Origin: Diplonema japonicum
Taxonomy: Eukaryota; Protista; Euglenozoa: Diplonemea
Reading direction: 5' to 3'
NCBI GenBank assembly: GCA_964019335.1
Contig: OZ025758.1
Span: forward strand, 1-64,000
DNA: 64,000 bases
Position numbers and translations under genes: made by a program. Position 1 is the stretch's first letter. Each line of letters starts with the position of its first letter. Shown here piece by piece: positions 706 to 52,364 of the stretch. The notes beneath the pieces are model-generated. The model ran no database searches and had not been told where the DNA came from. It worked only from the letters and a program-made list of their open reading frames with translations.

Positions 706-2510
706 CCCCCGTTTCCGGGTGCCCGTGTCACTGCAGGCCCCCCCGTTGGTGTCAATGTCGTTGGTGCATGAGAGGGTAATGATGTTGGTGTCCCTGTTAC
801 CGGTGCAAGGGTGGGTTGTGCTGTCGGCGTCCCTGTTATTGGTGGTGGAGAAGGCTGGGCTGTTGGAGTCCCCGTCACAGGTGCTGAAGAGGGCTGTGCC
901 GTTGGCGTGGTTGTCATTGGTGCTAAAGAGGGTAATGCTGTTGGTGTCCCTGTTATCGGTGCAGGTGAAGTCGGTGTCCCTGTAACCGGTGCAGGGGTGG
1001 GCGGTGCGGTCGGCGTCCCCGTGATCGGTGCTGAAGAGGGCAATGCTGTTGGTGCCCCTGTTACCGGTGCAGGGGTGGGTTGTGCCGTCGGCGTCCCCGT
1101 CACCGGTGCCAGGGTGGGCGGCCCGTCGGTCCCGGGTGCCGAGGAAGAGCAGTACGGGTAACAAACAGGAGGGCCACACGGTGCACACATAGAAAACCCA
1201 GCCAGCTCCGTTCGCGCCTCGTGGTCCGTCATGTTCTCATAGATGTAGTGGCCATACCACCACGAGCAGGGTTCAGAGACGGTGAAAGTTTGATACTGTG
1301 GTGGGTTGTCGCTCACAAGGAAGGTGATGTCCCCTTGGTGGGTGTGGTTCCACGACTCCTCACAGGAAGAGGGTACCGGGGGTGCTGGTGTGTCTGGTGA
1401 GTACGTGTGAGGAGCAGGGGTCACAGCTACTTCACCGCACTTCTCATACAACATCTTGTACTTCTTCTTGTACGGTGCGCCCCCCCACTCCACCGTGTTC
1501 AGAGGGTCCACTGCATCCAGCACAACCTGCGTCCCGTTCCCCTCCACAGTGAAGACCCCGTTCGAGTAGCTTGTGTTGTAGGTTTGGTCGCACTGTCTGG
1601 AGGCGTTAAAGGGGCTGTAGCAGGCCTTGAAGCCCTGCTGCTCAAAGTGGATGTGGTACCTCCAATAGTCCGGAGGTCCCCCAGGAACACGGTCGAGTTC
1701 CCACCACCCCTGCATCCTCATGTTGGGTGGGGGGTAGAGAAGGCGTTGCTCCCTCACATGCCTGAGCACCGCCTCCGCATCCGAGGCCGGGACCCCAGCA
1801 GGGACGTGGCCCACAGCCCCCCCCGTCGGGTAGTCTGTGTTCATCGCGAAGAACATGCTGAGGGAGACGAGATACAGCCCCAGCCCCGAGGGGTGCGACC
1901 CGTCTGACGAGTACAACCGGTAGAACCTCGAGGTGCTGTCCCCACCAGGCTCCACCCCAGACCCCTGCAGGTCCTCCTCGTAGATCGACCCGAAGGTCCT
2001 CCCAGCAGGGGCGATCGTTATGTTAATGCACCTGTTCTGAAAGTAGTCGAATAAATGCTCAACATTCTCCTGTCGGTCGTTCCCAGGAAAAGCGTATCGC
2101 CTCCCCCACGTCTCGTAGTTCACCACCGTCGCCCCTGCAACCCTCGCAGCCTCGAAGAGGGGTTCCACCTGGTGGGGGGCCGTTGTCACAATGCTCTGCT
2201 CTTGAAGGACAAGGAAGTCGAAGCCCCCCGCCGCCAGCTTCTGCGTCACTCTGCTGTCGGTCGCATGCGTAGAGAGGAAGGCTCCCCCTACCAAGACGCT
2301 GTCGACGACCACAGTCCTCCCGGGGATCGTTGCCTCTGTCACAGCCTTGTACAGCCCAGGTAGGTTGAACGAGTAGGAGTTCCCGATGAACAGCACACGC
2401 TGCGTGTCACCCTCCACCCCCTCTGCACACAGCAGCAGCAGCAACACCAACACTGCCACCAACGGCGACACCACAACCCCTGCCTCCCCTCTTTTTCCTT
2501 TCATTTTCAT
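706..2510 (-). CDS. Secreted SGNH/GDSL-type hydrolase (esterase-like) with Pro/Thr mucin-like stalk; no stop codon before the octamer array
   Basis: Manually translated from ATG at 2510: hydrophobic leader (VVVSPLVAVLVLLLL), VLFIGNSYSF (block I), LQEQS, YETWGR, IAPAG, LYSSDGSHPSGLGLYL (DxxH), then APVTGTPTA repeats; frame continues into the T-free (CAAACCCG)n, so it is absent from the ORF track. Confidence 0.8.
720..1140 (-). repeat. Degenerate coding repeats for the Pro/Thr-rich stalk (APVTGTPTAxPT/S)
   Basis: Recurring ggtgc...gtccc(t/c)gt(t/c)ac motifs within the SGNH ORF. Confidence 0.8.
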
Positions 2511-20822: not shown

Positions 20823-23800
20823 TCATAAAAGAGCAGCGGGGAGAGCGAGGCCTCTACCTCTTCCTCTGCCCCGCGAAGCTCGGGCGGTGTCTTGGGAGAA
20901 GATTGAGGCCGTCTGTGGGGTTGACCCTGATCTGTGCGACATCTCTGTAAGGGGCAGAGGATCGTCAGGTTTCAAAGATATCCTTCTTGCCAGCTTCCAA
21001 AGCACGGTGCCTGCAGTGAAGGGGCGCTTCTTTGCATGTTGGGTGATGGTCACCATGAGGGCAAGCAGGCCCTTCCTGTCGTTCGTAGTGAAGGTAATGT
21101 CCTTGTCCTTTCTGATCAATGTGAACGAGTACCGGCCGTGCTCCTTGGTTTCATACTTAACGGCGATGACCCCTCGCACGCTGCACTTCTGCCGTGGCTC
21201 TGCATCACCAGGCTTGGCATACCAAGCGACGTACTGCCCATCACGTGTGACCAACACCCATCTCGGAGGTGTTCCTTGTCCACCTTTGGTACTGTGCCGA
21301 ACAGCCCACACTCCCGTGTACCCTGACTCGAGTGCGGTGTCTGTCAGTGCTGACCGTTTGGGTCTTGGCACCCCTGTGAGGAGCGCAACCCCGGAACACT
21401 TTTCCATTAAAAATGTAACCTTTTCCTTCATGTGCGCAGGAAGCTCCACATCCTGTGAAAGCTCTGGGAACGATATGGTGCTTCCCGCCAGCCGTACCGT
21501 TTTGAAGCTGGGCTTCTGCACATTGTTAACCGAGCACCCCATTGCCGTTCCTTCCTTGTAGAGCTCCACAACGGCGCCCTGCGAAGTGGTGTACACAACG
21601 GGTGCGATGAAGGACACGTTGGCCACGGTGCAAAGATTCGAAACTTTCGAAAAGACCTCTGACCTTGCAGACGGCTCTGCCGGGAGGTCGACTTGTTTAT
21701 TGATCTCCGGCATGTGCAGCGCACGGCCGTGCTTCGACGTAGCAAGCCTTGTGAACGGTGGCCTGTTCTCTCCCAGCACTGCGTACTGCATGTGGCGCCC
21801 GTCTGGTGAGATTCTGATTGAGATCTCTGCACCATCAGTGGGGTCAGGATACACCACGGGGGGAGGGTGGCCTGCAGCATCGCTCGGCACCACCAATGGT
21901 GTGTTGTTCGTGTTCGTGTTCGTGTTGGTGTTCATAGTGCCGTTTGCATCGAAAGTCGCATCAAGCTGCGCAACAAGATCCTCCCCATTGGCATCAGACC
22001 TGCTATCATCTGTGTGCGTAGGTGCGCCCTTCTCACTCGCACTGGCGTCACTGTGCACCTCTGAGTACTGGTGGTCTGAACTTTCAGCAGCGCCGCCGTC
22101 CGATGATGGGCGTGCAGGGCCTTCATTGCTCCTCCGTCTTTCAATCACCATCCCGTGGTGTTTCCCCGTCACCGGGCAGTACTTGAACGCTGTCGGGGGG
22201 TTCTTGCACTTCGGGCATTGTTTTTCATGCGGTTTCCCCGTCTCTGTGCAATATCCATGCATGGTGGGATCCTTCCTGCAGTCCTTGCAGACGAAGACAC
22301 CCCCTGCGGCGCGAATCTTAGCCTGCCGCTCTAACGCGTCTCGAAGGCTGCCGCTGGGGTGGTCACCACCTTGTCGCATGGCTTCTGCATGTAATTCACC
22401 TAACTTCCTCAGATCGCTTCCGGTTGGGACCCTCTTGACGCCGGTGTAGGGTTCGGAGACCCTCCCATTGGACAGGTGCCCCTCACCCTGTTTGGACTTG
22501 ATTATGTGATCTATGAAGGCGTCCTCCACATCCTGCCCGTCGTCCTCCCTGCTAACACGATTGAACGACATCCCGAGAAGCGACCCTACGACAGGCTCGG
22601 GGGCAGACTTCAGCGGTGCGTCGGACAGACCAACAGGCATTTTAGCCAGCAGCTCAGTAGCCAAGGTGAGGGTGGCCTTTGGAGGATCCGGTCTTTTCAG
22701 CGTCTTTTTCTTCACGTACTTCTCGACGAACGGGTCCTCGATCTTCCTAGGGTCGGGGAACGGCTGCGGCATTTCCCATGAAGCGGTCTCCGACTGTGCG
22801 TCGCCAGACACCTCAACACCGCTTTCTTCAGAGAAGACCTGCAGCTCGTCAGCATCGATGGCAACGACTACATTGGCACCGTCGTCGGTGATGAAAGTAG
22901 ATCCCAGAGGCTGAACTGGGTCAGGTGCGGTCAAGGGACGGGGGTGCTCTTCGTTGACCTGTACGCCGAAGGATCTCCTGGGGCTTTCGGTAGTCTGAAC
23001 TTCACGTTCCACACTGCTGTGCCTCGGGGGACTCACCTCATGGTCACGATGCCTCGATGGACTCGCCTCGTCACGGTGCCGGTGTTTCCTTGTGGGCGTG
23101 CCCTCCTCGTCGCTGCTTGGTGGTGGCACAAAGGGGTAGGGCGACGTGCTTGACGTTCGCTTGTACGCTGTGACCTTCGCTGTGGTGGGTGGCCCGCTGC
23201 TGGACTGCATGGGCTGTGGCACGTCACCCATTGGGGTGGGGACAGGCGACAGGGAATCCCTTGCGACAGGAGTCGTCGTCGATGACGCAGTAGTACCATG
23301 ACGGCGACGGCGGTTGCCATTGCTGCTGGAATTATTATTCCTCTCGCCGCGAGGCGCCTTCAACGACTGCTCTTCTGGGGAAACCGTCGTCCAGTACAGC
23401 TGCCGGCCGCTAGAGGTAACCTTCAACGGCAACGGTGTGTCTGTTGCGGGTGAGGGGTCTGGTGTCGTCGTTGGCGAGACGCCACCCGTGGCGTTCAGCG
23501 CATCTTGGTTGAAGTTGAAGTTGAGAACCACAGAACCGGAGCGTGTCCTTTCCTGAGAAGGCGTCGAGTGTCTCCGTCTGATATTAGCGTACGAGTCTTC
23601 CTCATCGCTGCTGTCCCCTTGCGAGCCTGCATCGCTGTATATATCCTTGTCCTCCTTATCAGGAGACCTCCCGTCCTTTGTTCTGTCCCGGCTCCCTCGT
23701 CGCACCCGTTTCTTCGGCACGCGTGGGAGGTTCTGGGCATCCATCTGATAGAACTCCGTCCTGTAGCTGTTGGTGCGGTGTCTGTGCGGCGACCGCCATG

Positions 23801-26693
23801 GGTACACCGTGCCGGACCCACTGGGCGCCCAGTCCCCGTGTTTCCCGTCCTTGTCCTGCTTCGCTACACGTTCCATCACCTCTTTGTTGTATTCGTCCAA
23901 CTTTTTACTCTCCTGCAATGCCTTCTCCGCCTTCTCCCTGTCATACCCATCCTCCAGCGCTTCGAAGTTGAACAGTGCACCGCCATTCTTGCCCAATCCT
24001 TTTCGGAACTCTCGAAGCTTCCCTTTTTTCTCCGCTCCTGATAAAGGTGGGGATGAAGCTCTCCCGCTGCTGCTTGGAGGGGGTGACGAGCTTGACGCCC
24101 TTCGCCTGCTGCTCGAGTTAGACGCTCGGTCTCTGGAGATGCTGCCTCTGGAGGCACTGCGTTGCCGTGCTTGCTTCGCTCTTGCGTTGAAGTGATTGAC
24201 GACCCTGCTTGGGGGTGCGGACTGCCTTCTAGGTGATGAGGTGGGTGTGACGCTCCTTGCCTCGCTTTGGATGGTGCCACGTGCGAAGTCGTGCTTGCCC
24301 CTCCGTTGTTCGCGTGGTTTGGGAGTTGCCCCGTCAGGGGTTGCCCTTTGTGTGGTGACATGAGGCTCTTCGGACGGAGGTGCGGGGCGTTGGAAGACAC
24401 GCCGTTGCGAACCGCGTCGCTGCAGCATTTCCTTCTTGAGCTTGACACGCTCTCGTTCCTTCATGACGATCTCTTGCCGTTCGCGATCGGAGTGCTCCCG
24501 CAGGAGACGCTCGTGTTCGGCTTGGGAGTGCTGTTCGCGAGCATGGTCCACCTGGAGGTGAGAGCGGGGGCTTCTTTGAATGGGAACCTCCTCTTCGAGT
24601 CGTGCTGTCTGTATCACTTCAAGCCCCTGTGCATGTGCGTGTGTTGTGCCTGCGTCTTCTGTCTCTTGAGTGTCATCACTTTGAGAATGCGTGGCGCTCA
24701 TCTGCACAACATCTTCGCCTTTGTTGGAGTCTGTTTCGAAATGCTCTCCCCGTTGTGTCCACCCTTCTTCTTCTTCAAGCAAAGCCCTTTCTTGTTCGCG
24801 CTGCGCCCAGCGGCGGTCCCTTTCCCTTCTTTGCTCGCTCTCCCACGCCTGTTCCTCCTCTTGGATCGCCTTTTGCTTTTCCCATTCGATCTCGTTGTGC
24901 TTGTTCGCCCACTCTTCCCGGTATTCCTCCTCTTGTGTGTGATGCGCGTGTGTGGCTTGCACGGGCTGCCCCCAAGCCTCTTCCACCGTTTCTGGTTCAT
25001 CTCTGTTGTGAGCAGGCTGTTCCCATTTGTTTTCTAATGTGTCATCGTCTCTATTAAGTCTAGGTTTGTTGCTTCCGTTCAATTGTGTATCTCTCGCTTC
25101 TGTTTTATTCCACCCCGGTTGTTTCTTTTCTTCTTCTTCTTCTTCTTCTTCTTCGTGTTCGTTCTCGGCGTCTCTATTGGGTTTAGTTTCACTGGTGCTA
25201 TATTGTGTATCTTGGTAGGGTGCAGCCGACGGTTCTTCTACGCTCGTTGTGTGCAGTCGGGTGTTCCTTGTCATTTCTTCTTGTTGTTGTTTTAGTCTTT
25301 GCGCCGCCTCGTGCCTGTCTCGGGCTATCTCTTGTTCCCTCCGTTCGGCTTCCCTTTCGACCTTTTCTTTTTGCTGCTGAGCTAGAGCTGCCTCTTCTTC
25401 CTTGGCTTGCAGTGCTGTTTCCCATCTCCGCTGTCGTTCTTCGATTTCCCGTTCCCTTTCCTGCTCTCGTTTAAGGAGGTCCCTCTCTATTTTTTCTTGT
25501 TGTCGCGCGGCCTCATCTTCCTTATCACGCAAAACCCTTGTCCACTCTTCTTGTTGTCGTTGCGCTTCTTCCTCCTTGCTTCGCAAAGCTTCCCGCCACC
25601 CTTTTTCATCGATTTCCCTCTGCCGCTCTGCTTCCCGTTGTATTCTCGCTGTTTCCTCCTCCTTTTCTTGCAGAGCCCTGTCCCACTCTCGCTGCTGTTG
25701 CTCTGTGGAGTGTTCCCGCACCCTCTCCCGTTCCCGCAGGTCTCGTTCCAGTCTTTCTTTTTGGTCTGCGACCTCCTTCTCTTTTCGCTGCAGGATGTTC
25801 TCCCACTCATGCTGCTGTTGCTCCTTTTCTTGAAGGGATCTCTCCCAGTGTTGTCGGTGCCGGCGTTCAGATTCCTCCTGCTTGGCGTGGAGCTCATTCA
25901 GGTGCTGTTGCTCGCGCTGGTGCTTGAGGCGGTGGGACTCATCTCGTTCGTGGAGCAGCTTCTCGAGAAGCTTTTGTTTTTCAGACAGCTGTGAATGGAG
26001 GTCCCCACGCGACGACTCAGTGACAGCAAGGAGGCCCCGCCTGTGGGCAGCTTCAATGGTGTTGAAGCCTTGGGCTTGGGAGGAAGAGACCTCACCTCGT
26101 GAGTTGGTTTCGCTAGAGAATATATCTGATGTGTCTTTGAGCGACCGCGTGGTGGCACCGCTGCCGCCGCCGCTGTTTCGCATGGAGAACAGGTACGAAA
26201 GACGTTCCTCGTGCTGTTGCTGTTTGGCCTTCAACTCTTTAAGAAGCTCCGTGTTGTAGTTGCCGTTGTTGCCGTTCCTGCCCTTTGCCTTCTCGTTGTG
26301 CAGCTCCTTTCGCAAAGCCTTCACCTCCGCTTCTAAGAATTCCTGCGCTTTGGGTTTGTTGTTTCCAGGCCGATGTCTTCTGGGGGGGCTGCTCTGTATG
26401 CTGTGGCTCCTAAGGGGTTCCTTCTCGAACCGTGACGCAGGGGACATGACGATGGTGGATGAGGCGGCACTGCTGGGCTCTCGCAAGGATGGGGCAGCGG
26501 TAGCAGGCGACCGTCGTTCCATCACCTTGTCCACATTCCCGCTCAATCTCCTCACCTTGTCCTGCAGGTGGTTCAGATGCTGCTGTGCCTGACTCGACGC
26601 GGGGGAGACCGACGACCACCGTCCGTAGAACGAAACAGGCGAAACGGAGCTGGTGTGCCCCACCGACCTCACCTGTAGAGGGGGCACCTCCAT
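20823..26693 (-). CDS. 1956-aa coiled-coil/disordered protein with two CxxC...CxxTGxxH motifs, a duplicated ~75-aa domain and a C-terminal PH-like domain
   Basis: Long uninterrupted ORF; E/Q/R-rich coiled coil; CKDC...YCTETGKPH, CPKC...YCPVTGKHH; RWVLVT...VAWY...YSFTL...ITF (PH-like). Confidence 0.85.
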   Translation of the reverse strand: MEVPPLQVRSVGHTSSVSPVSFYGRWSSVSPASSQAQQHLNHLQDKVRRLSGNVDKVMERRSPATAAPSLREPSSAASSTIVMSPASRFEKEPLRSHSIQSSPPRRHRPGNNKPKAQEFLEAEVKALRKELHNEKAKGRNGNNGNYNTELLKELKAKQQQHEERLSYLFSMRNSGGGSGATTRSLKDTSDIFSSETNSRGEVSSSQAQGFNTIEAAHRRGLLAVTESSRGDLHSQLSEKQKLLEKLLHERDESHRLKHQREQQHLNELHAKQEESERRHRQHWERSLQEKEQQQHEWENILQRKEKEVADQKERLERDLRERERVREHSTEQQQREWDRALQEKEEETARIQREAERQREIDEKGWREALRSKEEEAQRQQEEWTRVLRDKEDEAARQQEKIERDLLKREQEREREIEERQRRWETALQAKEEEAALAQQQKEKVEREAERREQEIARDRHEAAQRLKQQQEEMTRNTRLHTTSVEEPSAAPYQDTQYSTSETKPNRDAENEHEEEEEEEEEKKQPGWNKTEARDTQLNGSNKPRLNRDDDTLENKWEQPAHNRDEPETVEEAWGQPVQATHAHHTQEEEYREEWANKHNEIEWEKQKAIQEEEQAWESEQRRERDRRWAQREQERALLEEEEGWTQRGEHFETDSNKGEDVVQMSATHSQSDDTQETEDAGTTHAHAQGLEVIQTARLEEEVPIQRSPRSHLQVDHAREQHSQAEHERLLREHSDRERQEIVMKERERVKLKKEMLQRRGSQRRVFQRPAPPSEEPHVTTQRATPDGATPKPREQRRGKHDFARGTIQSEARSVTPTSSPRRQSAPPSRVVNHFNARAKQARQRSASRGSISRDRASNSSSRRRASSSSPPPSSSGRASSPPLSGAEKKGKLREFRKGLGKNGGALFNFEALEDGYDREKAEKALQESKKLDEYNKEVMERVAKQDKDGKHGDWAPSGSGTVYPWRSPHRHRTNSYRTEFYQMDAQNLPRVPKKRVRRGSRDRTKDGRSPDKEDKDIYSDAGSQGDSSDEEDSYANIRRRHSTPSQERTRSGSVVLNFNFNQDALNATGGVSPTTTPDPSPATDTPLPLKVTSSGRQLYWTTVSPEEQSLKAPRGERNNNSSSNGNRRRRHGTTASSTTTPVARDSLSPVPTPMGDVPQPMQSSSGPPTTAKVTAYKRTSSTSPYPFVPPPSSDEEGTPTRKHRHRDEASPSRHRDHEVSPPRHSSVEREVQTTESPRRSFGVQVNEEHPRPLTAPDPVQPLGSTFITDDGANVVVAIDADELQVFSEESGVEVSGDAQSETASWEMPQPFPDPRKIEDPFVEKYVKKKTLKRPDPPKATLTLATELLAKMPVGLSDAPLKSAPEPVVGSLLGMSFNRVSREDDGQDVEDAFIDHIIKSKQGEGHLSNGRVSEPYTGVKRVPTGSDLRKLGELHAEAMRQGGDHPSGSLRDALERQAKIRAAGGVFVCKDCRKDPTMHGYCTETGKPHEKQCPKCKNPPTAFKYCPVTGKHHGMVIERRRSNEGPARPSSDGGAAESSDHQYSEVHSDASASEKGAPTHTDDSRSDANGEDLVAQLDATFDANGTMNTNTNTNTNNTPLVVPSDAAGHPPPVVYPDPTDGAEISIRISPDGRHMQYAVLGENRPPFTRLATSKHGRALHMPEINKQVDLPAEPSARSEVFSKVSNLCTVANVSFIAPVVYTTSQGAVVELYKEGTAMGCSVNNVQKPSFKTVRLAGSTISFPELSQDVELPAHMKEKVTFLMEKCSGVALLTGVPRPKRSALTDTALESGYTGVWAVRHSTKGGQGTPPRWVLVTRDGQYVAWYAKPGDAEPRQKCSVRGVIAVKYETKEHGRYSFTLIRKDKDITFTTNDRKGLLALMVTITQHAKKRPFTAGTVLWKLARRISLKPDDPLPLTEMSHRSGSTPQTASIFSQDTARASRGRGRGRGLALPAALL

Positions 26694-44044: not shown

Positions 44045-44565
44045 TATGAGTTAAAGGAGGCCGGTGTTGGCGGCGCCCTGCACAAGAACTGTCTACTTGA
44101 TTACAGGGGGCGCACCGCGGCCGAGTTGTAGCTTCTTCTGCGTTCCGCGTCGTGTCCTTAATGCGTGCGGTGTACAGCTCAACCCTAGCCGGGGCGTCCC
44201 GGGTAACCAAGATTCTGCGCTCGTGCAGTTTGCTGCCTGTTCGTCACCCTGAGCATCTGCAATACGTTCTTCCACTCGGGCGCTACCGGTGATGACCGAC
44301 GAGGAGGTCAACAGCGAACAACACATCTGATGTTTTTCTTATATTTTCATGTTATCCCCACCACCTTGAAAAAAAAAAGAAGAACTTAAAACGAACACTT
44401 TAGATGATTTGCATGTGGGAGGCGGGGTGGTGTATGAGAGGAAAAAAGAAGAAAAAAAAAAAAAAAAAGGATGGGGCTTTGATTGCAACACTAGGTGGCG
44501 TTAATCGTCGTGTCCTTAATGCGTGCGGTGTGCTCAACCCTAGCCGGGGCGTCCCGGGTAACCAA
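44044..44565. repeat. Repeat copies B (44044-44366) and internally deleted C (44471-44565)
   Basis: Direct similarity to 32185-32507 and 33590-33627. Confidence 0.9.
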
Positions 44566-44750
44566 CTTCTAAAGGAAACCAGCTATTTTTTCTCCTTTCC
44601 TTTTTGTGTCAAAAAAAGGATTAAATGAAAGGAATACCGGAAGAAGAAAAAAGAGGGGGGGGAAAAAAATAATACAAAAAGAGAGGCTTTTTTTTTCCTT
44701 CTTTTTTTTTTTTTTTTTCCCTTCGTGAACCCAAAAAAAAAAAAAAACCC

Positions 44751-47700
44751 TCACTCATCCCAACTATAGTCCTCGTTCACGATTTTCAGACTGCCGTTCT
44801 TCACCGACCCGTCTGGAATAGCCCAGCAAGGGGTGCGGTGGTACACAGGCTGCGGTATTTTGACGTGACCAGCATGGCCCGGCCACATAACAGGAGCCCC
44901 CTGCTCGAAAAGGCTCCCCAGCAAAGTATCAAGAGACCGCACCTCATTCTTCACCCTACACAGGGTGGGAACCATAGGAACACGGGCACCGTACGGCTGC
45001 AGAACAGGATGCGGAGAAACCTCCAGAACATGGGTGAGCCCCTCCACATCTACCATTTCGGCCAAAGCCTCCCTATATGAAACCGGATTTACCATCTGGT
45101 CGTGCCAATAAGCAACGGATTGAAGTGGATTCTTCACACATCCGATGGACGCTGTGCTATATAAATTCGCGGATACTGCCGTTCCGGGTGTGAAACAAGT
45201 TGCCCCCAACTCTCTCTTCATGGTGGCGGCGCTGTTGTGCATCACGTGCGGGTTGTGGAAAGCATATTGAACAGGCAGGCGTTTTATCTTGACAGTGTCC
45301 TGTCCAAGGTATCTGTCCTCTATCTTTCTGATGGTCTCGCTCAGTTCTACGTTGGGCCCCGACAGAACAAGGTCCGTGTCGGAGTTCCAAGACGCCACAA
45401 CAACCTTCGGCTCCAACAGGCTTTCCACAACCGATTCTTGCCCGTCTTCGATTTTATTCGTGAAGGACAATGCAGCCATGCCGTTCTCCGCGCCTGTTGC
45501 TGTGTGCATCGCCGTGGACCTGTGATGGACCAAGACAACCGCAGATTCAAGATCTAACGAACCAGCAACTACCGCTGCAGCAATTTCTCCCAAAGAATGT
45601 CCTAAAACAGACACAGGGGTTACACCGTGTTGGGACAGAACCTCGACTAGGCCTAGTTGTAATGCGAAGATTGCGGGTTGTGCGTTTACCGTGGCTTGAA
45701 GGGTGTCCTCTGAGAGGGTGTGCGGTGCCTCGAACAGAGTTCTGAGGTTGAACCCGTTGCCTTTGCTGTGCTTCTCGTACAGGTGTGCCACCTCGTTGAC
45801 GACCTTCCTGAAGGGTGCGAAGGTTGTGTACAACCCGGACCCCATGCCGATCCACTGCGGGCCTTGCCCGGAGAACACAAACCCTATCCGGACTGGTTGT
45901 GTCGCACGGCAGGACTCGACATCTTTGTTGACCAACGCTGATGCGATATCTTCCTTGTCGTAGCCCGTCACGCACACCCTCGGCCATTGAAGGTTCGACG
46001 ATGGGATCGTTCTCCTCGCGACGGATCGGCAGTACGAAGCCAGTTCATTGTCCGGCAGCACGCGGATCTGTTTCGAAACAGATGATTTCAATGCGTTAAG
46101 CGCCGCTTCTGTAGGCGCTGTTAAGGGCAGCATACAGTGCGATGTGACGGGTACTTGTTGAGGTTTCTTTTGAGGCTCCGGTGCCGTTCCGAGAACGGCG
46201 TGTGCGTTGGTCCCACCAAAGCCGAAGGATGAGCACCCCGCGTATCTTCTCCCTTCCACGGGTTCTCCAGGCCATTTTCCATACGTTTTTTGCAAGCTTC
46301 TGTCCACAAAACCGCAATGAGGGTTTGGTACTGTGTAGTTCACCGATGGTGTCAAGCTGCCGTGGTGCATGGAGAGCGCGACTTTAACCAAACCGAACAC
46401 GCCGGCAGCTGCCTCGAGATGCCCGATGTTTGGTTTCACACCGCCTAGTCGGCATCGTTTGGAGAGATGTTCTGTCCCGAAAACGGACTCCAACGCTGCC
46501 AGCTCGATCGGGTCGCCGAGGAACGTCCCTGTCCCGTGTGCCTCGATGAAACTGATTTGGGAGGGTTGAACACCAGCATCTTGCAGGGCCTTTGTGATGC
46601 AGTCTTCCTGTGCTTTTCCGTTCGGGGCCGTCAGGCCGTTGGACTTGCCGTCTTGGATGACCGCCGTGCCTTTTATCGTTGCGTAGATTTTATCGTTAGA
46701 AGCGACTGCTGCGGAGAGGGGTTTGAGGATGATGGTGGCGGCGCCTTCCCCGCGGGCGTAGCCGTTCGCTGTTGAGTCGAATGTTTTACAGTGTCCGTCT
46801 GGGGAGAGGAAGCCTCCCTTTGCAAAGGCCTCCGAAACATCGGGGGTTAGAATGAGGTTCGCCCCGCCGACGATCGCGTGGTCGCACGCACCTTCACGGA
46901 TCGCTCTGCACGCGTCGTGCACTGCAACCAGCGAGCTTGAACATGCTGTGTCGATAGCCGACGCTGTGCCTCGCAGACCAAGCTTTTCCAAGATCCTCAT
47001 AGGACATGCTGACTTCTCATTTGGAGACAGCATGCCCGTTGCCTTCGCTGCGTCTGCTACTAGGTCGTGCTCACGTAGCATTCTGCTGTACTCTGTGCTC
47101 GATAGACCCATGAAGCAGCCTGTTGTCCCCATTTCTTCTTTGTTTAAACAGGAGTCTTTCAAAGCGCTCTCTGTGGCCTCTAGTAGAAGTCTGTGCTGCG
47201 GGTCGGTGTGTGCCGCCTCGTCTTCTCCCATCGCGAAGTACTCGAAGTCGAAGCTTTCGATCGCGTCTTTTGTGAAGAACGACCCCAGACGGACACCACC
47301 GCTTCCCTCAGGCCATCTTCCTGCAGGGATTTCCTTTCCTGTCAATGTTCCACCGGACTTGAGAAGATCCCACAGCGCAGTTGGGGTTGACGCCGCAGGT
47401 GTTATACAGCCGATCCCAACAATCGCGATTTCCTCGTCGAGAAGGGTTTGTTCCGGTGGGATTTCAATGGAAGCAGCGGAGGCTGAATGTGGAACGAACG
47501 GTTGTTTCAATGCTGCCGAGCGGGCCTTCGGGGTGTTCATCGGCGACGCGTGAGGCGTGAAGAAAACAGTGTCCTCCTGCAACACGTCCAAGCAGCGAAG
47601 GGTCTTCTCCATGGTGTCCGGTTTCTTGTTCTTCTTCTCCCACTCTTTGAGGATTTCTAGGTTCCCTGATAGGTATTCCTTCTTCGTGGCGGCCCGTTGA

Positions 47701-50700
47701 ATCTTCCCGGAGCTTGTTTTGGAAATGGTTCTCGGCGGGATAAGAACCAGTACCGCAGGTGTGTACCCGTGGTTTGTCTCAAGGGTCTTGTGTACCGTCG
47801 TGCAAAGTTCGTTGAAGTCGACGCCTTTGGACCTCTCGGTGTCCAGTTCGATAACAACAGCGAATGAATCGAGATGCTCGAATGCGGCGCAGCACCCTTT
47901 TCTGACGGCTTTGTGGGCGACCTCGCACGAGCCTTCGAGGTCCTGCGGGTAGATGTTCGATCCATTCATGTTGATGACGTCCTTGATCCTCCCTGTGATG
48001 AAACATTCCCCGTTTGGCAAGATGAACCCCAGATCCCCTGTTCGCAGCCATTCCCCTTCCACGTTGCTGAACGTGAGTTTAAAAGCTGTCTCGGTCGCCG
48101 CTTCGTTGTCCCAGTACCCTTTCGCCACGGTGGGGCCCTTTACGATGACCTCACCAACCTTCATATCCTCTGGTTTAATCTGGTTCCCTTCCGCATCAAC
48201 AGCCGACAGTGTGTTGCCCAGCCATTGTATGCCTTGCGACACCACGGAGCGGTACTCACCCGAAACGATTTGTGCGTCAGTTGCTTCCTTCACCTTTCCT
48301 GCTGAGAGGGCGTTAACGTCTAGAAGGATCGCTGTGGGCTCCATGTGGACAAGCTTGTTCGCGATGATAAGGGTCGCCTCTGCCAACCCGTACCCAGGGT
48401 AGAAGGTCTTGCTGGGGAACGACGGGAACGCCTTGCAGAAGTTCCTCGCCGTCGTCATCTTCACGGGCTCCGCACCGCAGAACGCTATTCTCCACCTCGA
48501 CAGGTCGTACCCCCTCCCTTCGCTCTTCGTGCACTTCTTTGAAGCTAGATCATAAGCAAAGTTCGGCCCCCCTGAGATGGTCCCTTTGAACTTGGACATT
48601 GCCGCCACCCACCTCGTCGGCTTCTGAAGGAACATCTCCGGTGACATCAGGTACAATGGATATCCCACATACGCAGGGCTCAGGATACCCATGATGAGCC
48701 CAAGGTCGTGGAACTCAGGGCACCACGACACACCCACGTCGTTCTCGTGCATCTCACCTGCCGCACGAGAGATTTCCAAATTGTACAGGATGTTGTAGTG
48801 AGTCACCATGACACCCTTCGGTGCAGAGGTGGACCCAGAGGTGTACTGCAGGAAGGCAACGTCATCCTTCTCAACACCAGGAGGCTTCCACTCGTCCGCA
48901 AGGGACAGTGACAGCTCGTCCGTTGCAATGAGAGGGATCGACGCCAGTTGAGGGATCTGGTCGGCCAGCACCTGAGCCATCTCCTTGATCTCCTTTGTGG
49001 TTGCGATGGCGGAGGGTTTGCAGTCCTCGATGATCCCAAGGAGCCTTGGAAGCAGCCTGCTGAGCCTGGCAGGGTGAGGGGGATAGCTTGGAACACTGAT
49101 GGCACCAAGGTAAAGACAACCGAAAAACGCGCTCACAAAGTCAAGCGTCTGAGGGTAGAGAAGGAGCACACGGTCGCCCTTCGAACAGTGACGAGAGAGC
49201 CCTGCTGCGACTGCACGGGAGTGCTTGTCGAGGTCGCTGTATGTGAACTTAACACCTTCCCGTTCGCCATCCTCTAGATGGGTGTAAGCAAGCTTTGTGG
49301 GGCTGATGCGTGCACGCAGCTGGGCAATCTCGTACAGAGAAGAGTATGTCTCAAGCGGCCGCTTCCCTTCGAACTGCCTCAGGTGTTCTGGGGAGTAGGA
49401 GATGGACATTGTCTCCTCCTTCATGGCAGCGACGTCGGCAGGTGTAGGCCGCCATGTGAACTTCCTGGCCTCAGCCACGTTAGTGGTGAGCAGTGTGGTG
49501 GACACGGAACCGGGACAGTGGTCATGCACCATGTGCTGCTCCAGTTCGTTTGACTCGAGAGCGGCCTTGGTTGCGCGACGTTGGATCTTCCCGGAAGTTG
49601 TTTTGCAGATGTTTCCTCTAGTGAGGAGCACCACGCGGTGCACGGCAAGACCGTGCTTCTCCTGGACTGCCTCGATCACTTTGACGCACTTGCTTTCCAG
49701 ATCCTCCGACTCCGCCTTTGGATCGATCTCCTGCACAATGTTGAGCCTCTGCCCGTCACCGTCCGGATCGGGTGTCATAAAAGCTGCCACGCTGCCGAGC
49801 TTGAAGCATGAGTCCGTCGCCTCGCACGTCCATTCCAAGTCATGTGGGTAGTAGTTTGTTCCGTTGATGATGAGGACGTCTTTGCTTCTCCCTGTGATGA
49901 AGCATTCCCCGTCGGAGGTTAGGAACCCAAGGTCGCCTGTGCGCAGCCAGTGGCCGTCCTCTCCTTCAACTGTAGCACGGAAGGCTTCCTCTGTGGCGGT
50001 TTCGTTGCCCCAGTATCCCTGCGCCACGGTGGGGCCCTTCACCCACACCTCACCGACGGACAACGGAGCGCACTTCACACTGTCCTTCACAACTATGAGC
50101 TTGTTGTCCAACCATTGCCAGCCTTGGGACACCACAGACCTGTAGTTCGATGTTTCGACGTCCACCCGTGTGGCAGGCACTGCCACGCCGTCGTCTTGTA
50201 GCTCCTTTGTCTTGCAGATGAAGTGGGAGGGTTCTGTTTGGACCAACGAGTTCGCGATGATAAGGGTCGCCTCTGCCAACCCGTACCCAGGGTAGAAGGT
50301 CTTGCTGGGGAACGACGGGAACGCCTTGCAGAAGTTCCTCGCCGTCGAGATTTTCACGGGCTCTGCACCGCAGAACGCGATCTTCCACCTCGACAGGTCG
50401 TACCCTTCCCCTTCGCTCTTCGTGCACTTCCTCGCAGCCAGATCATAAGCAAAGTTCGGCCCCCCTGAGATGGTCCCTTTGAACTTGGACATTGCCGCCA
50501 CCCACCTCGTCGGCTTCTGAAGGAACATCTCTGGTGACATCAGGTACAATGGATATCCCACATACGCAGGGCTCAGGATACCCATGATGAGCCCAAGGTC
50601 GTGGAACTCAGGGCACCACGACACACCCACGTCGTTCTCGTGCATCTCACCCACCACACGAGAGATTTCCAAATTGTACAGGATGTTGTAGTGAGTCACC

Positions 50701-52364
50701 ATGACACCCTTCGGTGCAGAGGTGGACCCAGAGGTGTACTGCAGGAAGGCAACGTCATCCTTCTCAACACCAGGAGGCTTCCACTCGTCCGCAAGGGACA
50801 GTGACAGCTCGTCCGTTGCAATGAGAGGGATCGACGCCAGTTGAGGGATCTGGTCGGCCAGCACCTGAGCCATCTCCTTGATCTCCTTTGTGGTTGCGAT
50901 GGCGGAGGGTTTGCAGTCCTCGATGATCCCAAGAAGCCTTGGAAGCAGCCTGCTGAGCCTGGCAGGGTGAGGGGGATAGCTTGGAACACTGATGGCACCA
51001 AGGTAAAGACAACCGAAAAACGCGCTCACAAAGTCAAGCGTCTGAGGGTAGAGAAGGAGCACACGGTCGCCCTTCGAACAGTGACGAGAGAGCCCTGCGG
51101 CAACTGCACGGGAGTGCTTGTCGAGGTCGCTGTATGTGAACTTAACACCTTCCCGTTCGCCATCCTCTAGATGGGTGTAAGCAAGCTTTGTGGGGCTGAT
51201 GCGTGCACGCAGCTGGGCAATCTCGTACAGAGAAGAGTATGTCTCAAGCGGCCGCTTCCCTTCGAACTGCCTCAGGTGTTCTGCACCGTAGCCCAGCGAC
51301 TGTGCACGGTCGGCCCTCTCTTTGATGAACTCTTTCGTTGGCCTCTGAGCGTATGCGAGCACGTCGTCAACAGACATTGTTGCAGGGGTGAAGGTTTGGT
51401 CCTCTGAAGAGGTTGCCACCGCAGTGGTTTTGCGAATGGACTCGATGGACGGAGCGCCCAGCTCGTTTACAAGTGCGAGGTAGAAGCCCATGGCGGCCTC
51501 AGGGGTGGTTTTTTCCAGCGCGGACCAAGCAGCCCATTTTCGTTGGCCCACAACGTCGAACATTCCAGGCTTCGGGTCGGTGCAAGGACCCTTCGTGACC
51601 TGTTTGAAAAGCCCGTACAGCTTGAGCTGCTTGTCTTGAGGGGGTTTACTGGGTAGATGTTTCACCCGTTCAACAGCATCGTCAAAGGCTTGTCTGTTGA
51701 CCTCCACAGGGCCTGTAGACTCCTCTGCGGAGAGCGTCTTGACAAGTGCAACATACTTTGACATGGCCGCCACCTCTGACAGGGAGGAGTGTTCCTTCCA
51801 AGACTGCCACTTTCGCTGCCCAACAGGGTCGAAGATGGAAGGCCGGGACTGGGAACAAGCTCCTTTTGTGGCTTGGTTGAACAGCCCGTATAGTTCCATC
51901 TGATGGGTGTCGGACGGGGGTGTGGAAAACGATTTTGCCCGTTTTGCTGCTTGCAAAAATTTTTCCTTGCTGCTTTGTGTATGGTCTGGGGGCGGGGTCA
52001 GGGTGTTGACTAGTTTTACGTATTTTATTTTGGCTTCTTCGGCAGCCATGCCATTGAGGGCCGACCAAGCCTGCCATTTTGCTGCGCCTATGTAATCCAG
52101 TAGTGTGTTTGGTTTCTTCCCGGTGCAGTCCCCCTCGGTGCCCTGCTTGTACAAGCTATATAGGTCGAGTTTTATGTTGTTGCTGAGGCCGGTGACCTCC
52201 TTCACACGACGGGAGGCCGCCTCGAAATCGTGTAAATGATCTGCTTCCTCTTGTGTTGCTTGTCCACCGTCTTCACTGTGGATTTCATATTCCGAACTTT
52301 TCTTGAATCCCGGGGGCGTCGTAGGTCGCCCGCCAAAACTGAATGACCTGAGAAGGCCCAACAT
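44751..52364 (-). CDS. Type I PKS-like protein: 3x acyl-CoA-binding (ACBP) domains, 2x fatty acyl-AMP ligase (FAAL) domains, KS, AT; no ACP or reductive domains seen
   Basis: LYSLYKQGTEG/LYGLFNQATKG/LYGLFKQVTKG + KWxAW (ACBP); AFLQYTSGSTSAPKG, YGLAEATL, WLRTGDLG, KTxSGKIQR twice; DTACSSS, EAHGTGT, NIGHLEAAAG (KS); FSGQGPQW, GHSLG, YAFH (AT). Start taken at ATG 52364. Confidence 0.9.
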   Translation of the reverse strand: MLGLLRSFSFGGRPTTPPGFKKSSEYEIHSEDGGQATQEEADHLHDFEAASRRVKEVTGLSNNIKLDLYSLYKQGTEGDCTGKKPNTLLDYIGAAKWQAWSALNGMAAEEAKIKYVKLVNTLTPPPDHTQSSKEKFLQAAKRAKSFSTPPSDTHQMELYGLFNQATKGACSQSRPSIFDPVGQRKWQSWKEHSSLSEVAAMSKYVALVKTLSAEESTGPVEVNRQAFDDAVERVKHLPSKPPQDKQLKLYGLFKQVTKGPCTDPKPGMFDVVGQRKWAAWSALEKTTPEAAMGFYLALVNELGAPSIESIRKTTAVATSSEDQTFTPATMSVDDVLAYAQRPTKEFIKERADRAQSLGYGAEHLRQFEGKRPLETYSSLYEIAQLRARISPTKLAYTHLEDGEREGVKFTYSDLDKHSRAVAAGLSRHCSKGDRVLLLYPQTLDFVSAFFGCLYLGAISVPSYPPHPARLSRLLPRLLGIIEDCKPSAIATTKEIKEMAQVLADQIPQLASIPLIATDELSLSLADEWKPPGVEKDDVAFLQYTSGSTSAPKGVMVTHYNILYNLEISRVVGEMHENDVGVSWCPEFHDLGLIMGILSPAYVGYPLYLMSPEMFLQKPTRWVAAMSKFKGTISGGPNFAYDLAARKCTKSEGEGYDLSRWKIAFCGAEPVKISTARNFCKAFPSFPSKTFYPGYGLAEATLIIANSLVQTEPSHFICKTKELQDDGVAVPATRVDVETSNYRSVVSQGWQWLDNKLIVVKDSVKCAPLSVGEVWVKGPTVAQGYWGNETATEEAFRATVEGEDGHWLRTGDLGFLTSDGECFITGRSKDVLIINGTNYYPHDLEWTCEATDSCFKLGSVAAFMTPDPDGDGQRLNIVQEIDPKAESEDLESKCVKVIEAVQEKHGLAVHRVVLLTRGNICKTTSGKIQRRATKAALESNELEQHMVHDHCPGSVSTTLLTTNVAEARKFTWRPTPADVAAMKEETMSISYSPEHLRQFEGKRPLETYSSLYEIAQLRARISPTKLAYTHLEDGEREGVKFTYSDLDKHSRAVAAGLSRHCSKGDRVLLLYPQTLDFVSAFFGCLYLGAISVPSYPPHPARLSRLLPRLLGIIEDCKPSAIATTKEIKEMAQVLADQIPQLASIPLIATDELSLSLADEWKPPGVEKDDVAFLQYTSGSTSAPKGVMVTHYNILYNLEISRAAGEMHENDVGVSWCPEFHDLGLIMGILSPAYVGYPLYLMSPEMFLQKPTRWVAAMSKFKGTISGGPNFAYDLASKKCTKSEGRGYDLSRWRIAFCGAEPVKMTTARNFCKAFPSFPSKTFYPGYGLAEATLIIANKLVHMEPTAILLDVNALSAGKVKEATDAQIVSGEYRSVVSQGIQWLGNTLSAVDAEGNQIKPEDMKVGEVIVKGPTVAKGYWDNEAATETAFKLTFSNVEGEWLRTGDLGFILPNGECFITGRIKDVINMNGSNIYPQDLEGSCEVAHKAVRKGCCAAFEHLDSFAVVIELDTERSKGVDFNELCTTVHKTLETNHGYTPAVLVLIPPRTISKTSSGKIQRAATKKEYLSGNLEILKEWEKKNKKPDTMEKTLRCLDVLQEDTVFFTPHASPMNTPKARSAALKQPFVPHSASAASIEIPPEQTLLDEEIAIVGIGCITPAASTPTALWDLLKSGGTLTGKEIPAGRWPEGSGGVRLGSFFTKDAIESFDFEYFAMGEDEAAHTDPQHRLLLEATESALKDSCLNKEEMGTTGCFMGLSSTEYSRMLREHDLVADAAKATGMLSPNEKSACPMRILEKLGLRGTASAIDTACSSSLVAVHDACRAIREGACDHAIVGGANLILTPDVSEAFAKGGFLSPDGHCKTFDSTANGYARGEGAATIILKPLSAAVASNDKIYATIKGTAVIQDGKSNGLTAPNGKAQEDCITKALQDAGVQPSQISFIEAHGTGTFLGDPIELAALESVFGTEHLSKRCRLGGVKPNIGHLEAAAGVFGLVKVALSMHHGSLTPSVNYTVPNPHCGFVDRSLQKTYGKWPGEPVEGRRYAGCSSFGFGGTNAHAVLGTAPEPQKKPQQVPVTSHCMLPLTAPTEAALNALKSSVSKQIRVLPDNELASYCRSVARRTIPSSNLQWPRVCVTGYDKEDIASALVNKDVESCRATQPVRIGFVFSGQGPQWIGMGSGLYTTFAPFRKVVNEVAHLYEKHSKGNGFNLRTLFEAPHTLSEDTLQATVNAQPAIFALQLGLVEVLSQHGVTPVSVLGHSLGEIAAAVVAGSLDLESAVVLVHHRSTAMHTATGAENGMAALSFTNKIEDGQESVVESLLEPKVVVASWNSDTDLVLSGPNVELSETIRKIEDRYLGQDTVKIKRLPVQYAFHNPHVMHNSAATMKRELGATCFTPGTAVSANLYSTASIGCVKNPLQSVAYWHDQMVNPVSYREALAEMVDVEGLTHVLEVSPHPVLQPYGARVPMVPTLCRVKNEVRSLDTLLGSLFEQGAPVMWPGHAGHVKIPQPVYHRTPCWAIPDGSVKNGSLKIVNEDYSWDE
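48357..51283. repeat. Internal ~1.03-kb near-identical duplication (48357-49390 and 50250-51283) covering the N-terminal part of both FAAL domains
   Basis: Sequences align at a 1893-bp offset with only scattered substitutions. Confidence 0.92.

What the first reader, a model, noticed from the sequence alone, without database searches (positions are those of the whole stretch)
44751..52364. ACP-less polyketide synthase with three acyl-CoA-binding domains and two FAALs: a possible new acyl-carrier logic
Seen: one ORF with order ACBP-ACBP-ACBP-FAAL-FAAL-KS-AT, intact KS Cys/His/His (DTACSSS, EAHGTGT, NIGHL) and AT GHSLG/YAFH, ending shortly after AT; no GxDS phosphopantetheine site visible in the linkers or C-terminus, and no KR/DH/ER/TE. 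Established: FAALs (identified here by the insertion after YGLAEATL) transfer acyl-AMP to an ACP rather than CoA, and FAAL-ACP-KS-AT is the usual starter module; ACBP is a eukaryotic acyl-CoA shuttle and is not a standard PKS domain. Inference: the ACBP triplet feeds, buffers or senses acyl-CoA, or even substitutes for the ACP (non-covalent CoA-thioester carrier); alternatively a stand-alone ACP works in trans.
Basis: partly seen in the sequence, partly recalled or inferred. Interest (0 to 1): 0.9.

Follow-up and report, generated by a model that had tools for sequence, protein, structure and literature searches.

The report
Carrier-less fatty-acid-primed polyketide synthase with ACBP domains
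A marine protist (diplonemid-type) gene encodes a conserved enzyme with all the parts needed to activate a fatty acid and extend it by two carbons. It lacks the carrier domain such enzymes normally need and has three acyl-CoA-binding domains instead, so how it holds its substrates is an open, testable question.

Summary
Window 44751-52364 (minus strand) is one uninterrupted 2537-residue ORF. Its order is ACBP x3, FAAL x2, KS, AT.

- **Catalytic state:** KS Cys/His/His, AT Ser/Arg/YAFH and both FAAL cores are intact.
- **No carrier domain:** Pfam, a custom ACP model that found four positive controls in the same genome, and two AlphaFold models all find none. No unassigned segment exceeds 68 residues.
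- **Where the ACP was:** bacterial relatives carry a canonical ACP between FAAL and KS. Here that place holds a disordered 68-residue linker.
- **Gene ends:** both are real. Relatives, including transcriptome-derived ones, share the N-terminal motif and the acidic-aromatic C-terminus. The 2.2 kb downstream is non-coding.
- **Family:** seven ACP-less relatives (diplonemid-type and prokinetoplastid) form one clade nested in bacterial FAAL-ACP-KS-AT synthases.
- **Rarity:** the ACBP-FAAL fusion turned up in only about six proteins, across searches of 5.8 and 1.8 billion.
- **Literature:** I found no description of it.

The mechanism is unresolved. A phosphopantetheine carrier supplied in trans is my best guess (about 0.45).

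RNA evidence for this species was not available.

The parts
44751..52364 (-). Whole coding sequence (2537 aa plus stop), single exon
   Evidence: No in-frame micro-intron: all five GTATG sites lie in conserved coding blocks. Independent contigs are identical over 44759-48386.
52329..52364 (-). Conserved N-terminal motif MLGLLRSFSFGG. It is basic and has no acidic residue before position 25. Possible targeting signal or membrane helix.
   Evidence: Shared with P0001, P0002, P0016 and P0022. AlphaFold gives a short helix at residues 2-8, then disorder to residue 35.
51981..52235 (-). ACBP domain 1 (res 44-128)
   Evidence: Pfam PF00887. Four-helix bundle in AlphaFold. Orthologous to the first ACBP of P0001 and P0002.
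51714..51968 (-). ACBP domain 2 (res 133-217). The Lys of the YKQ motif is replaced by Asn.
51435..51695 (-). ACBP domain 3 (res 224-310)
   Evidence: Best solved match is the ACBP domain of peroxisomal enoyl-CoA isomerase, 2cqu, E 2.4e-19.
49530..51239 (-). FAAL domain 1 (res 376-945). Adenylation motifs are intact.
   Evidence: The C-terminal half is orthologous to FAAL1 of P0001.
47640..49346 (-). FAAL domain 2 (res 1007-1575). Adenylation motifs are intact.
   Evidence: The C-terminal half groups with FAAL2 of P0001 and with the single FAAL of P0002, P0121 and P0043.
50250..51283 (-). Homogenised repeat, copy 1 (N-terminal half of FAAL1)
   Evidence: 98% nucleotide identity over 1034 bp to 48357-49390
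48357..49390 (-). Homogenised repeat, copy 2 (N-terminal half of FAAL2)
   Evidence: Read depth doubles here in three independent runs.
47436..47639 (-). Disordered 68-residue linker occupying the place of the ACP in bacterial relatives
   Evidence: Alignment against bacterial GLDSL-type ACPs. pLDDT 24-34. No ACP-model hit.
47541..47579 (-). Conserved short motif QEDTVFFTPHASP in the linker. It resembles a phospho-FFAT motif (acidic tract, aromatic at position 2, Thr at 4, Pro at 5).
   Evidence: Conserved in Q, P0001, P0002 and P0043 within otherwise unalignable linkers. Motif definition from PMC7705450.
46335..47435 (-). Ketosynthase (res 1644-2010), Cys1808/His1943/His1982 intact
45882..46334 (-). 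KS-AT interdomain linker (res 2011-2161)
   Evidence: PF16197. Canonical didomain fold.
44997..45881 (-). Acyltransferase (res 2162-2456): GQGPQ, GHSLGE, Arg, YAFH (malonyl-type)
44754..44996 (-). Post-AT linker and tail (res 2457-2537), ending in the conserved acidic-aromatic C-terminus NEDYSWDE (44754-44777)
   Evidence: C-termini of all seven family members align and end here. The last 19 residues are disordered.

Best explanation
This is a genuine, functional, single-exon gene of a euglenozoan. Earlier scan notes call the organism a diplonemid. The gene descends from a bacterial fatty-acid-primed type I polyketide synthase starter module (FAAL-ACP-KS-AT-...). In the common ancestor of the diplonemid and prokinetoplastid copies the module lost its carrier domains and everything after the AT, and gained N-terminal acyl-CoA-binding domains.

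Shown: the domain order, the intact catalytic residues, the absence of any ACP, the conserved termini, the single origin and the rarity.

Inferred, most likely mechanism: the two FAAL domains adenylate long-chain fatty acids. The acyl group is passed to a 4'-phosphopantetheine thiol carried by a separate protein (an ACP acting in trans). The AT loads malonate from malonyl-CoA onto the same kind of carrier. The KS performs one decarboxylative condensation to give a beta-ketoacyl thioester two carbons longer. In this reading the ACBP domains capture or buffer long-chain acyl-CoA next to the enzyme, as a substrate pool, a product sink or a feedback sensor. The conserved N-terminal motif, the FFAT-like linker motif and the acidic-aromatic C-terminus would place or dock the enzyme.
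For: - **Architecture and residues:**
- **FAAL class:** the 15 best solved relatives are FAALs (7r7e/f/g, 3kxw, FadD32, FadD23, FadD28, 3pbk); CoA ligases score about 100 orders of magnitude worse. FAALs are reported to reject CoA and to need holo-ACP (PMC8460268). By residue spacing, the Trp, Pro, helix and Phe elements that paper names are present here.
- **AT substrate:** in the diplonemid branch the AT keeps Ser, the carboxylate-binding Arg and YAFH. That is what a transferase loading malonate onto a thiol carrier needs.
- **Fold:** the KS-AT model matches carrier-dependent didomains (CurL 4mz0, Pks13, DEBS; TM 0.78-0.80 normalised to the target).
- **Carrier machinery in the genome:** three phosphopantetheinyl transferase hits (one inside the C10 FAS-like ORF) and many ACPs, including a free-standing 117-aa one.
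- **Selection:** the ACP-less clade is monophyletic (support 100) and KS residues are intact in all seven members, so the form has been kept by selection.
Against: - No partner ACP is identified.
- The neighbouring genes are unrelated.
- The four other PKS-like genes each have their own loader and ACPs.
- The only free-standing ACP looks like the mitochondrial one, and nothing shows this 280-kDa protein is mitochondrial.
- A trans-ACP model gives the ACBP domains no necessary role. Yet every member with a complete N-terminus has at least one, and 11 of the 12 ACBP copies compared across four family members keep the acyl-CoA-binding residues; the exception is ACBP2 of this protein.
- The prokinetoplastid branch has a dead, truncated AT.
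- No RNA data exist for this species.
Confidence: 0.45

Rival explanations
1. CoA replaces the carrier protein. The ACBP domains hold CoA or acyl-CoA non-covalently by its nucleotide end, so that the pantetheine arm reaches the FAAL, AT and KS sites as an ACP arm would. In a weaker form, the ACBP domains feed acyl-CoA straight to the KS, which also uses malonyl-CoA directly.
For: - ACP loss and ACBP gain coincide on the same branch.
- ACBP is present in every member with a complete N-terminus, and its nucleotide-binding and acyl-binding residues are conserved.
- The number of ACBP domains equals the number of active loading domains (FAAL plus live AT) in Q (3 = 2+1), P0001 (3 = 2+1), P0002 (2 = 1+1) and P0016/P0022 (1 = 1+0).
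- The AT is dispensable in prokinetoplastids.
- ACP-independent ketosynthases working on CoA esters have a precedent in the macrotetrolide type II PKS, as cited in PMC8471558.
Against: - The FAAL class is reported to exclude CoA sterically (PMC8460268), and the excluding elements appear to be kept here.
- A malonyl-type AT has no obvious use if malonyl-CoA enters the KS directly.
- The count rule fails for the prokinetoplastid paralogue P0036/P0030, which has one ACBP but two FAALs plus a divergent adenylation domain. It rests on only three independent architectures.
- There is no precedent for ACBP as a carrier.
Confidence: 0.2
2. The protein is mitochondrial and is a fatty-acid-primed KAS/MCAT fusion. 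It feeds pre-made fatty acids into the type II mitochondrial fatty acid synthase through the mitochondrial ACP. This is a special case of the trans-carrier model.
For: - The only free-standing ACP found is a 117-aa ORF with an N-terminal extension.
- A type II KAS and a 335-aa AT also exist in the genome.
- The conserved N-terminus is basic, hydroxylated and free of acidic residues for 12-25 positions in five members.
Against: - The protein is very large for mitochondrial import.
- ACBP domains and an FFAT-like motif point to the cytosolic face of membranes.
- No targeting predictor or localisation data were available.
Confidence: 0.15
3. The protein is not a chain-extending synthase. It is a lipid-homeostasis regulator or acyl-remodelling enzyme in the manner of DIP2 (tandem FAAL-like domains with an unknown acceptor). 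The KS-AT would be used for acyl transfer or sensing.
For: - Tandem FAAL domains with the DIP2-like C-domain (PF23024).
- DIP2 also lacks a known ACP partner (PMC8460268).
- The AT is degenerate in one branch.
Against: - The KS catalytic triad is intact in all seven members.
- The FAALs are much closer to bacterial PKS FAALs than DIP2 would require.
- No DMAP1-binding domain is present.
Confidence: 0.1
4. Artefact or relic: either the ACP is encoded by a missed exon or lost through an assembly error, or the gene is decaying.
For: Earlier notes on this genome report micro-introns of 31-71 nt, and an ACP completed by micro-exons in another gene.
Against: - The 2.2 kb after the stop is low-complexity, repeat-rich DNA up to the next gene.
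- No PP-binding hit lies anywhere on the contig.
- Transcript-derived relatives end at the same conserved C-terminus.
- Three independent assemblies agree base for base.
- Catalytic residues are conserved.
Confidence: 0.03

Closest known systems
Bacterial FAAL-ACP-KS-AT starter modules of type I PKS and hybrid PKS/NRPS (nearest in the tree: P0019, P0049; also P0013, P0006; solved parts: FAAL 7r7e-g, CurL KS-AT 4mz0)
   Same: Same FAAL class (about 40-46% identity), the same KS-AT didomain fold with its linkers, and the same domain order. Some bacterial members (P0006) also have two FAALs in tandem.
   Different: The bacterial proteins have a canonical ACP (GLDSL) between FAAL and KS, and further KR/DH/ACP/TE or R domains after the AT. 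Here both are missing and ACBP domains are added at the N-terminus.
Mycobacterial FadD32-Pks13 (mycolic acid condensation)
   Same: A FAAL activates a long fatty acid for a KS-AT that does a single Claisen condensation. FadD32 and the Pks13 KS-AT are among the best sequence and structure matches.
   Different: Pks13 carries two ACPs and a thioesterase, and its FAAL is a separate protein. Here there are no ACPs and no release domain.
DIP2 / CPS1 family (DMAP1-binding domain plus two tandem FAAL-like domains)
   Same: A eukaryotic protein with tandem FAAL-type domains, the PF23024 C-domain and no known ACP partner.
   Different: No DMAP1-binding domain. The FAALs here are of bacterial PKS type and are followed by an active KS-AT.
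ACBP-domain fusion proteins: ECI2 (ACBP plus enoyl-CoA isomerase) and, from my own knowledge, ACBD4/5 (ACBP plus an FFAT motif that binds VAP)
   Same: An ACBP domain is fused to, or tethers, an enzyme or organelle that handles acyl-CoA. ACBP3 is closest to the ECI2 ACBP domain. A phospho-FFAT-like motif sits in the linker.
   Different: Those partners are CoA-dependent. Here the fused activating domains belong to the class reported to reject CoA.
ACP-independent condensing enzymes (macrotetrolide type II PKS; from my own knowledge also type III PKS and FabH)
   Same: Ketosynthases that act on CoA thioesters without a carrier protein (cited in PMC8471558).
   Different: These are different KS families. 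No type I KS-AT didomain is known to work this way.

Membership tests
Type I PKS/FAS KS-AT condensing didomain | KS Cys-His-His triad | tested here: met
   DTACSSS, EAHGTGT and NIGHL are present, and intact in all seven family members.
Type I PKS/FAS KS-AT condensing didomain | AT with GHSxG Ser, carboxylate-binding Arg and xAFH motif | tested here: met
   GHSLGE, Arg and YAFH are present in Q, P0001, P0002 and P0043. They are lost in P0016, P0022 and P0030.
Type I PKS/FAS KS-AT condensing didomain | Didomain fold with KS-AT linker and post-AT linker | tested here: met
   AlphaFold pLDDT is mostly 80-95 over KS-AT. Foldseek gives 4mz0 at TM 0.80 (normalised to the target), plus Pks13 and DEBS.
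Type I PKS module (complete) | Phosphopantetheine carrier (ACP, PF00550) in cis | tested here: not met
   No Pfam hit at E 0.1. No hit on the contig. The custom ACP HMM with filters off finds four controls but nothing here. There is no GxDS. Linkers are disordered and at most 68 aa.
Fatty acyl-AMP ligase (FAAL) | Sequence closer to solved FAALs than to acyl-CoA ligases; adenylation motifs intact | tested here: met
   FAALs score 1e-126 to 1e-62 against about 1e-28 for CoA ligases. Motifs A3, A5, A7, A8 and A10 are present in both copies.
Fatty acyl-AMP ligase (FAAL) | FAAL-specific insertion and CoA-rejecting elements (EcFAAL W224, P226, M231, helix 252-258, F279) | tested here: inconclusive
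   The insertion region aligns without a large gap to FAAL 7r7g. Trp, Pro, Pro and Phe fall at offsets +0, +2, +35 and +55, matching the published numbering. Leu replaces Met at +7. This was inferred by spacing only, not by an alignment to 3pbk.
Fatty acyl-AMP ligase (FAAL) | Forms acyl-AMP, rejects CoA and transfers to holo-ACP | not testable with these tools
   Needs enzyme assays.
ACBP (PF00887) | Pfam match over the cut-off, four-helix bundle and conserved Tyr/Lys/Lys/Tyr ligand residues | tested here: met
   Three matches totalling 238 bits. Bundles in AlphaFold. The residues are kept in ACBP1 and ACBP3; ACBP2 has Lys to Asn in the YKQ motif.
DIP2 | [quoted passage not shown] | tested here: not met
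   No DMAP1-binding hit. KS-AT follows the FAALs.
Phospho-FFAT motif (VAP/MSP ligand) | Acidic tract, aromatic at core position 2, Ser/Thr at position 4 (definition in PMC7705450) | tested here: met
   V-F-F-T-P-H-A follows QED, and the motif is conserved in four members. MSP-domain genes exist in the genome. Binding itself was not testable.

The most novel reading that the evidence does not exclude
The ACBP domains act as non-covalent carrier proteins. Each holds a CoA by its 3'-phospho-ADP end, so that the pantetheine arm serves the FAAL, AT and KS sites. That would be a polyketide or fatty-acid condensing machine that runs on tethered CoA instead of a phosphopantetheinylated ACP. The match between the number of ACBP domains and the number of active loading domains in three of the four architectures would then be meaningful.
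Probability: 0.17. Interest if true: 0.95.

Novelty: new variant of a known kind. Interest (0 to 1): 0.68.

Why it matters
Every characterised type I synthase of this kind moves its substrates on a covalently attached phosphopantetheine arm. FAALs are thought to exist precisely to bypass CoA.

Here is a family that has kept active FAAL and KS domains since before the diplonemid-type and prokinetoplastid lineages separated. Its diplonemid-type branch has also kept an active AT. It has no carrier of its own and is fused to the classic CoA-ester binding domain. Two outcomes are possible, and either is informative:

- It works with an unknown partner carrier. That would be a rare split, type-II-like use of a type I module in a eukaryote.
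- It uses CoA in a new way.

It also holds the only FAAL-type domains in this genome, so it probably defines a distinct lipid or polyketide product in diplonemids, which are among the most abundant marine heterotrophs. The question is directly testable with recombinant domains and with knock-outs, if a genetically tractable diplonemid that carries the gene is available.

Tried and rejected
- **Hidden or divergent ACP:** rejected.
- **Extra exons after the stop:** rejected. The stop is followed directly by homopolymer runs and a roughly 1600-copy dispersed repeat, and the next gene starts near 42512.
- **In-frame micro-introns:** none found.
- **Assembly artefact of the FAAL repeat:** rejected by doubled depth, the repeat-boundary joint and a second variant contig in three studies.
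- **Complementary partner among the other synthases** (C23, C72, C96, C113): each has its own loader and ACPs, so none looks incomplete.
- **RNA evidence:** no run on record as RNA holds the gene. One possible RNA run of a relative gave only short contigs at 90-95% identity, and the substitutions in them were uninformative.
- **Search with KS-AT alone for shorter ACP-less kin:** gave only bacterial PKS fragments that carry ACPs, plus P0043.
- **Literature:** eight searches found no description of an ACBP-FAAL-KS-AT protein.
Full report
**What is there.** The minus strand of the window carries an open frame from 52805 to 44751. Translation shows homopolymer-derived junk upstream of a Met at 52364. 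That Met starts a motif (MLGLLRSFSFG) also found at the N-terminus of the closest relative P0001 (MIGLLRKLSFG), and in looser form in P0002, P0016 and P0022.

Pfam gives these domains:
- three ACBP domains;
- two AMP-binding domains, each followed by the DIP2-like FAAL C-terminal domain;
- ketosynthase N and C;
- the KS C-terminal extension;
- an acyltransferase.

Down to E 0.1 nothing else matches meaningfully (two sub-threshold chance hits only), and there is no PP-binding, KR, DH, ER or TE.

**Is the sequence sound?**
- Contigs of three independent studies of the same organism lie on 44759-48386 with no differences.
- The 1034-bp stretch repeated between the two FAALs shows doubled depth, a second variant contig and the expected joint at the repeat boundary, so the tandem FAALs are real.
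- All large ORFs of the window lie on one strand.
- Earlier notes on this genome describe a diplonemid-type organism with one-strand gene arrays and micro-introns of 31-71 nt. I therefore checked for introns. The five GTATG sites in the gene all lie in conserved coding blocks.
- The stop codon is followed at once by homopolymer runs and a dispersed repeat present at about 1600 times single-copy depth. Non-coding sequence continues to the next gene, near 42512.
- No PP-binding match lies anywhere on this contig.

**Is there really no carrier domain?** Five tests agree.
- Pfam finds none.
- I built an ACP model from 264 PKS ACPs and ran it with all filters off. It recovered four positive controls from the same genome (37, 27, 20 and 8.6 bits) and gave no hit at all in this protein or in P0001.
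- Bacterial relatives have a canonical ACP with GLDSL exactly between FAAL and KS. The euglenozoan proteins have Pro/Ser/Ala-rich linkers of 36-138 residues there.
- AlphaFold models of residues 1-1040 and 1441-2537 account for every folded segment: three four-helix ACBP bundles, FAAL1, the FAAL2 C-domain and KS-AT. The segments 941-1006, 1579-1641 and 2519-2537 are disordered, with pLDDT 21-34.
- No unassigned segment exceeds 68 residues, which is too short for an ACP with its linkers.

**The family.** A word-indexed search of 5.8 billion proteins and a full HMMER scan of 1.84 billion representatives find very few proteins that join ACBP to this FAAL. They are:
- P0001 (2595 aa, 48% identical end to end, same seven domains);
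- P0002 and P0121 (label Hpha; ACBP x2, FAAL, KS, AT);
- P0016, P0022 and P0036 (labels PhF_6 and PhM_4; ACBP, FAAL, KS, degenerate AT).

P0043 and P0030 are N-terminally incomplete members. I read the labels as the diplonemid Hemistasia and the free-living prokinetoplastids; that reading is my inference.

In a KS-AT tree the seven ACP-less proteins form one clade (support 100). It is nested among bacterial FAAL-ACP-KS-AT synthases, nearest P0019 and P0049. This points to one acquisition from bacteria and one loss of the carriers, before diplonemid-type and prokinetoplastid lineages separated.

- All seven keep the KS triad.
- The diplonemid branch keeps a malonyl-type AT (Ser, Arg, YAFH).
- The prokinetoplastid branch has lost the AT serine, histidine and about 100 residues of the domain.
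- All seven end in the same acidic-aromatic C-terminus (WDE, WDD, DFE). For the transcript-derived members this shows that the protein really stops after the post-AT linker.

**The parts.**
- *FAAL domains.* These are the only two FAAL-type C-domains in the 62.5-Mb genome. The best solved relatives of FAAL1 are all FAALs, and CoA ligases are far weaker. The published CoA-rejecting elements (PMC8460268) appear to be kept, judged by residue spacing only.
- *FAAL duplication.* It is old. In the C-terminal half, FAAL1 groups with FAAL1 of P0001 (support 97), and FAAL2 groups with FAAL2 of P0001 and the single FAAL of the other members. The first 345 residues have been homogenised separately in each species: 95% and 89% identity, against 47% and 45% in the C-terminal halves. 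So the acid-binding cores are kept alike while the acceptor-facing halves differ.
- *ACBP domains.* They are canonical. ACBP3 is closest to the ACBP domain of enoyl-CoA isomerase ECI2. The ligand-binding Tyr/Lys/Lys/Tyr set is kept in 11 of the 12 ACBP copies compared across four family members; the exception is ACBP2 of this protein.
- *KS-AT.* The model superposes on CurL, Pks13 and DEBS didomains.

**How it may work.** What the data show is an enzyme with every catalytic part of a fatty-acid-primed single extension and no carrier.

The conservative reading is a carrier supplied in trans:
- FAALs need a phosphopantetheine thiol.
- A conserved malonyl-type AT needs a thiol acceptor.
- The genome has transferases and ACPs.

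Its weaknesses:
- No partner is visible.
- The four other PKS-like genes are self-sufficient.
- The only free-standing ACP looks mitochondrial.
- The ACBP domains have no necessary role.

- ACP loss and ACBP gain coincide.
- ACBP number equals the number of live loading domains in Q, P0001, P0002 and P0016/P0022.
- The AT could be lost in one branch.

Against it:
- FAALs are reported to reject CoA.
- A malonyl-specific AT would be unexplained.
- The paralogue P0036/P0030 breaks the count rule.

I put the trans-carrier model at about 0.45. The mitochondrial version is listed separately at 0.15. The CoA-based model is at about 0.2, a DIP2-like non-synthase role at 0.1, and artefact at 0.03.

**Comparison and novelty.** It works most like the starter module of bacterial lipopeptide and polyketide lines, or like FadD32-Pks13. 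It fails the defining test of a complete type I module, which is a carrier in cis. It is not DIP2, because it has no DMAP1-binding domain. Literature searches found no description of this architecture. The survey of euglenozoan metabolism does not mention it. I class it as a new variant of a known kind, with a modest chance of being something new in principle.

**Limits.**
- No RNA run was available for this species, and only contigs could be laid.
- Organism names rest on earlier notes and on database labels.
- The FFAT-like, N-terminal and C-terminal motifs are sequence observations only.

Noticed in passing
window 48357-49390 and 50250-51283: The N-terminal halves of the two FAAL domains are 98% identical in DNA, while the C-terminal halves are only about 47% identical in protein and are orthologous between species. 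This indicates ongoing gene conversion confined to the adenylation core, and it is seen independently in P0001.
   Followed up: yes
window 47541-47579: A conserved acidic-tract F-F/Y-T-P motif sits in the linker that replaced the ACP. It fits the published phospho-FFAT definition for ligands of VAP/MSP proteins. Three MSP-domain loci exist in the genome (C103, C14, C4).
   Followed up: partly
window 44754-44777 and 52329-52364: The protein ends are conserved across the whole family: a basic N-terminal motif and an acidic-aromatic C-terminus (W/F followed by D/E at the very end). They may be targeting or docking signals.
   Followed up: partly
window 44130-44700: A dispersed repeat just after the stop codon is present at roughly 1600 times single-copy depth in three independent runs. 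Part of it occurs twice within 400 bp.
   Followed up: partly
window 1-1109: The contig starts with 88 perfect copies of the 8-bp unit CGGGTTTG, G-rich on the plus strand. Degenerate 39/78-bp repeats follow. The orientation is opposite to that expected for a left-end telomere.
   Followed up: no
G000 contig C96, about 228000-292400: A single open frame of 21,455 codons has an adenylation-ACP-KS-AT start and more than 20 further carrier domains spaced about 3.2 kb apart. It is a giant hybrid PKS/NRPS.
   Followed up: partly
P0036 and P0030 (prokinetoplastid transcripts): Overlapping fragments suggest a second paralogue with order ACBP, FAAL, a very divergent adenylation domain, FAAL, KS, dead AT.
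   Followed up: partly
window 20823-26693 (minus strand): A 1956-residue ORF has no Pfam match and lies in a stretch with strongly skewed A/T composition (AT skew -0.56 at 24001-26000).
   Followed up: no
G000 C84:217070-220027 and C20:718184-720508: Two proteins join a weak carrier-domain match to ankyrin repeats. One also has part of an adenylation domain. They are possible free carriers with a protein-docking module.
   Followed up: partly
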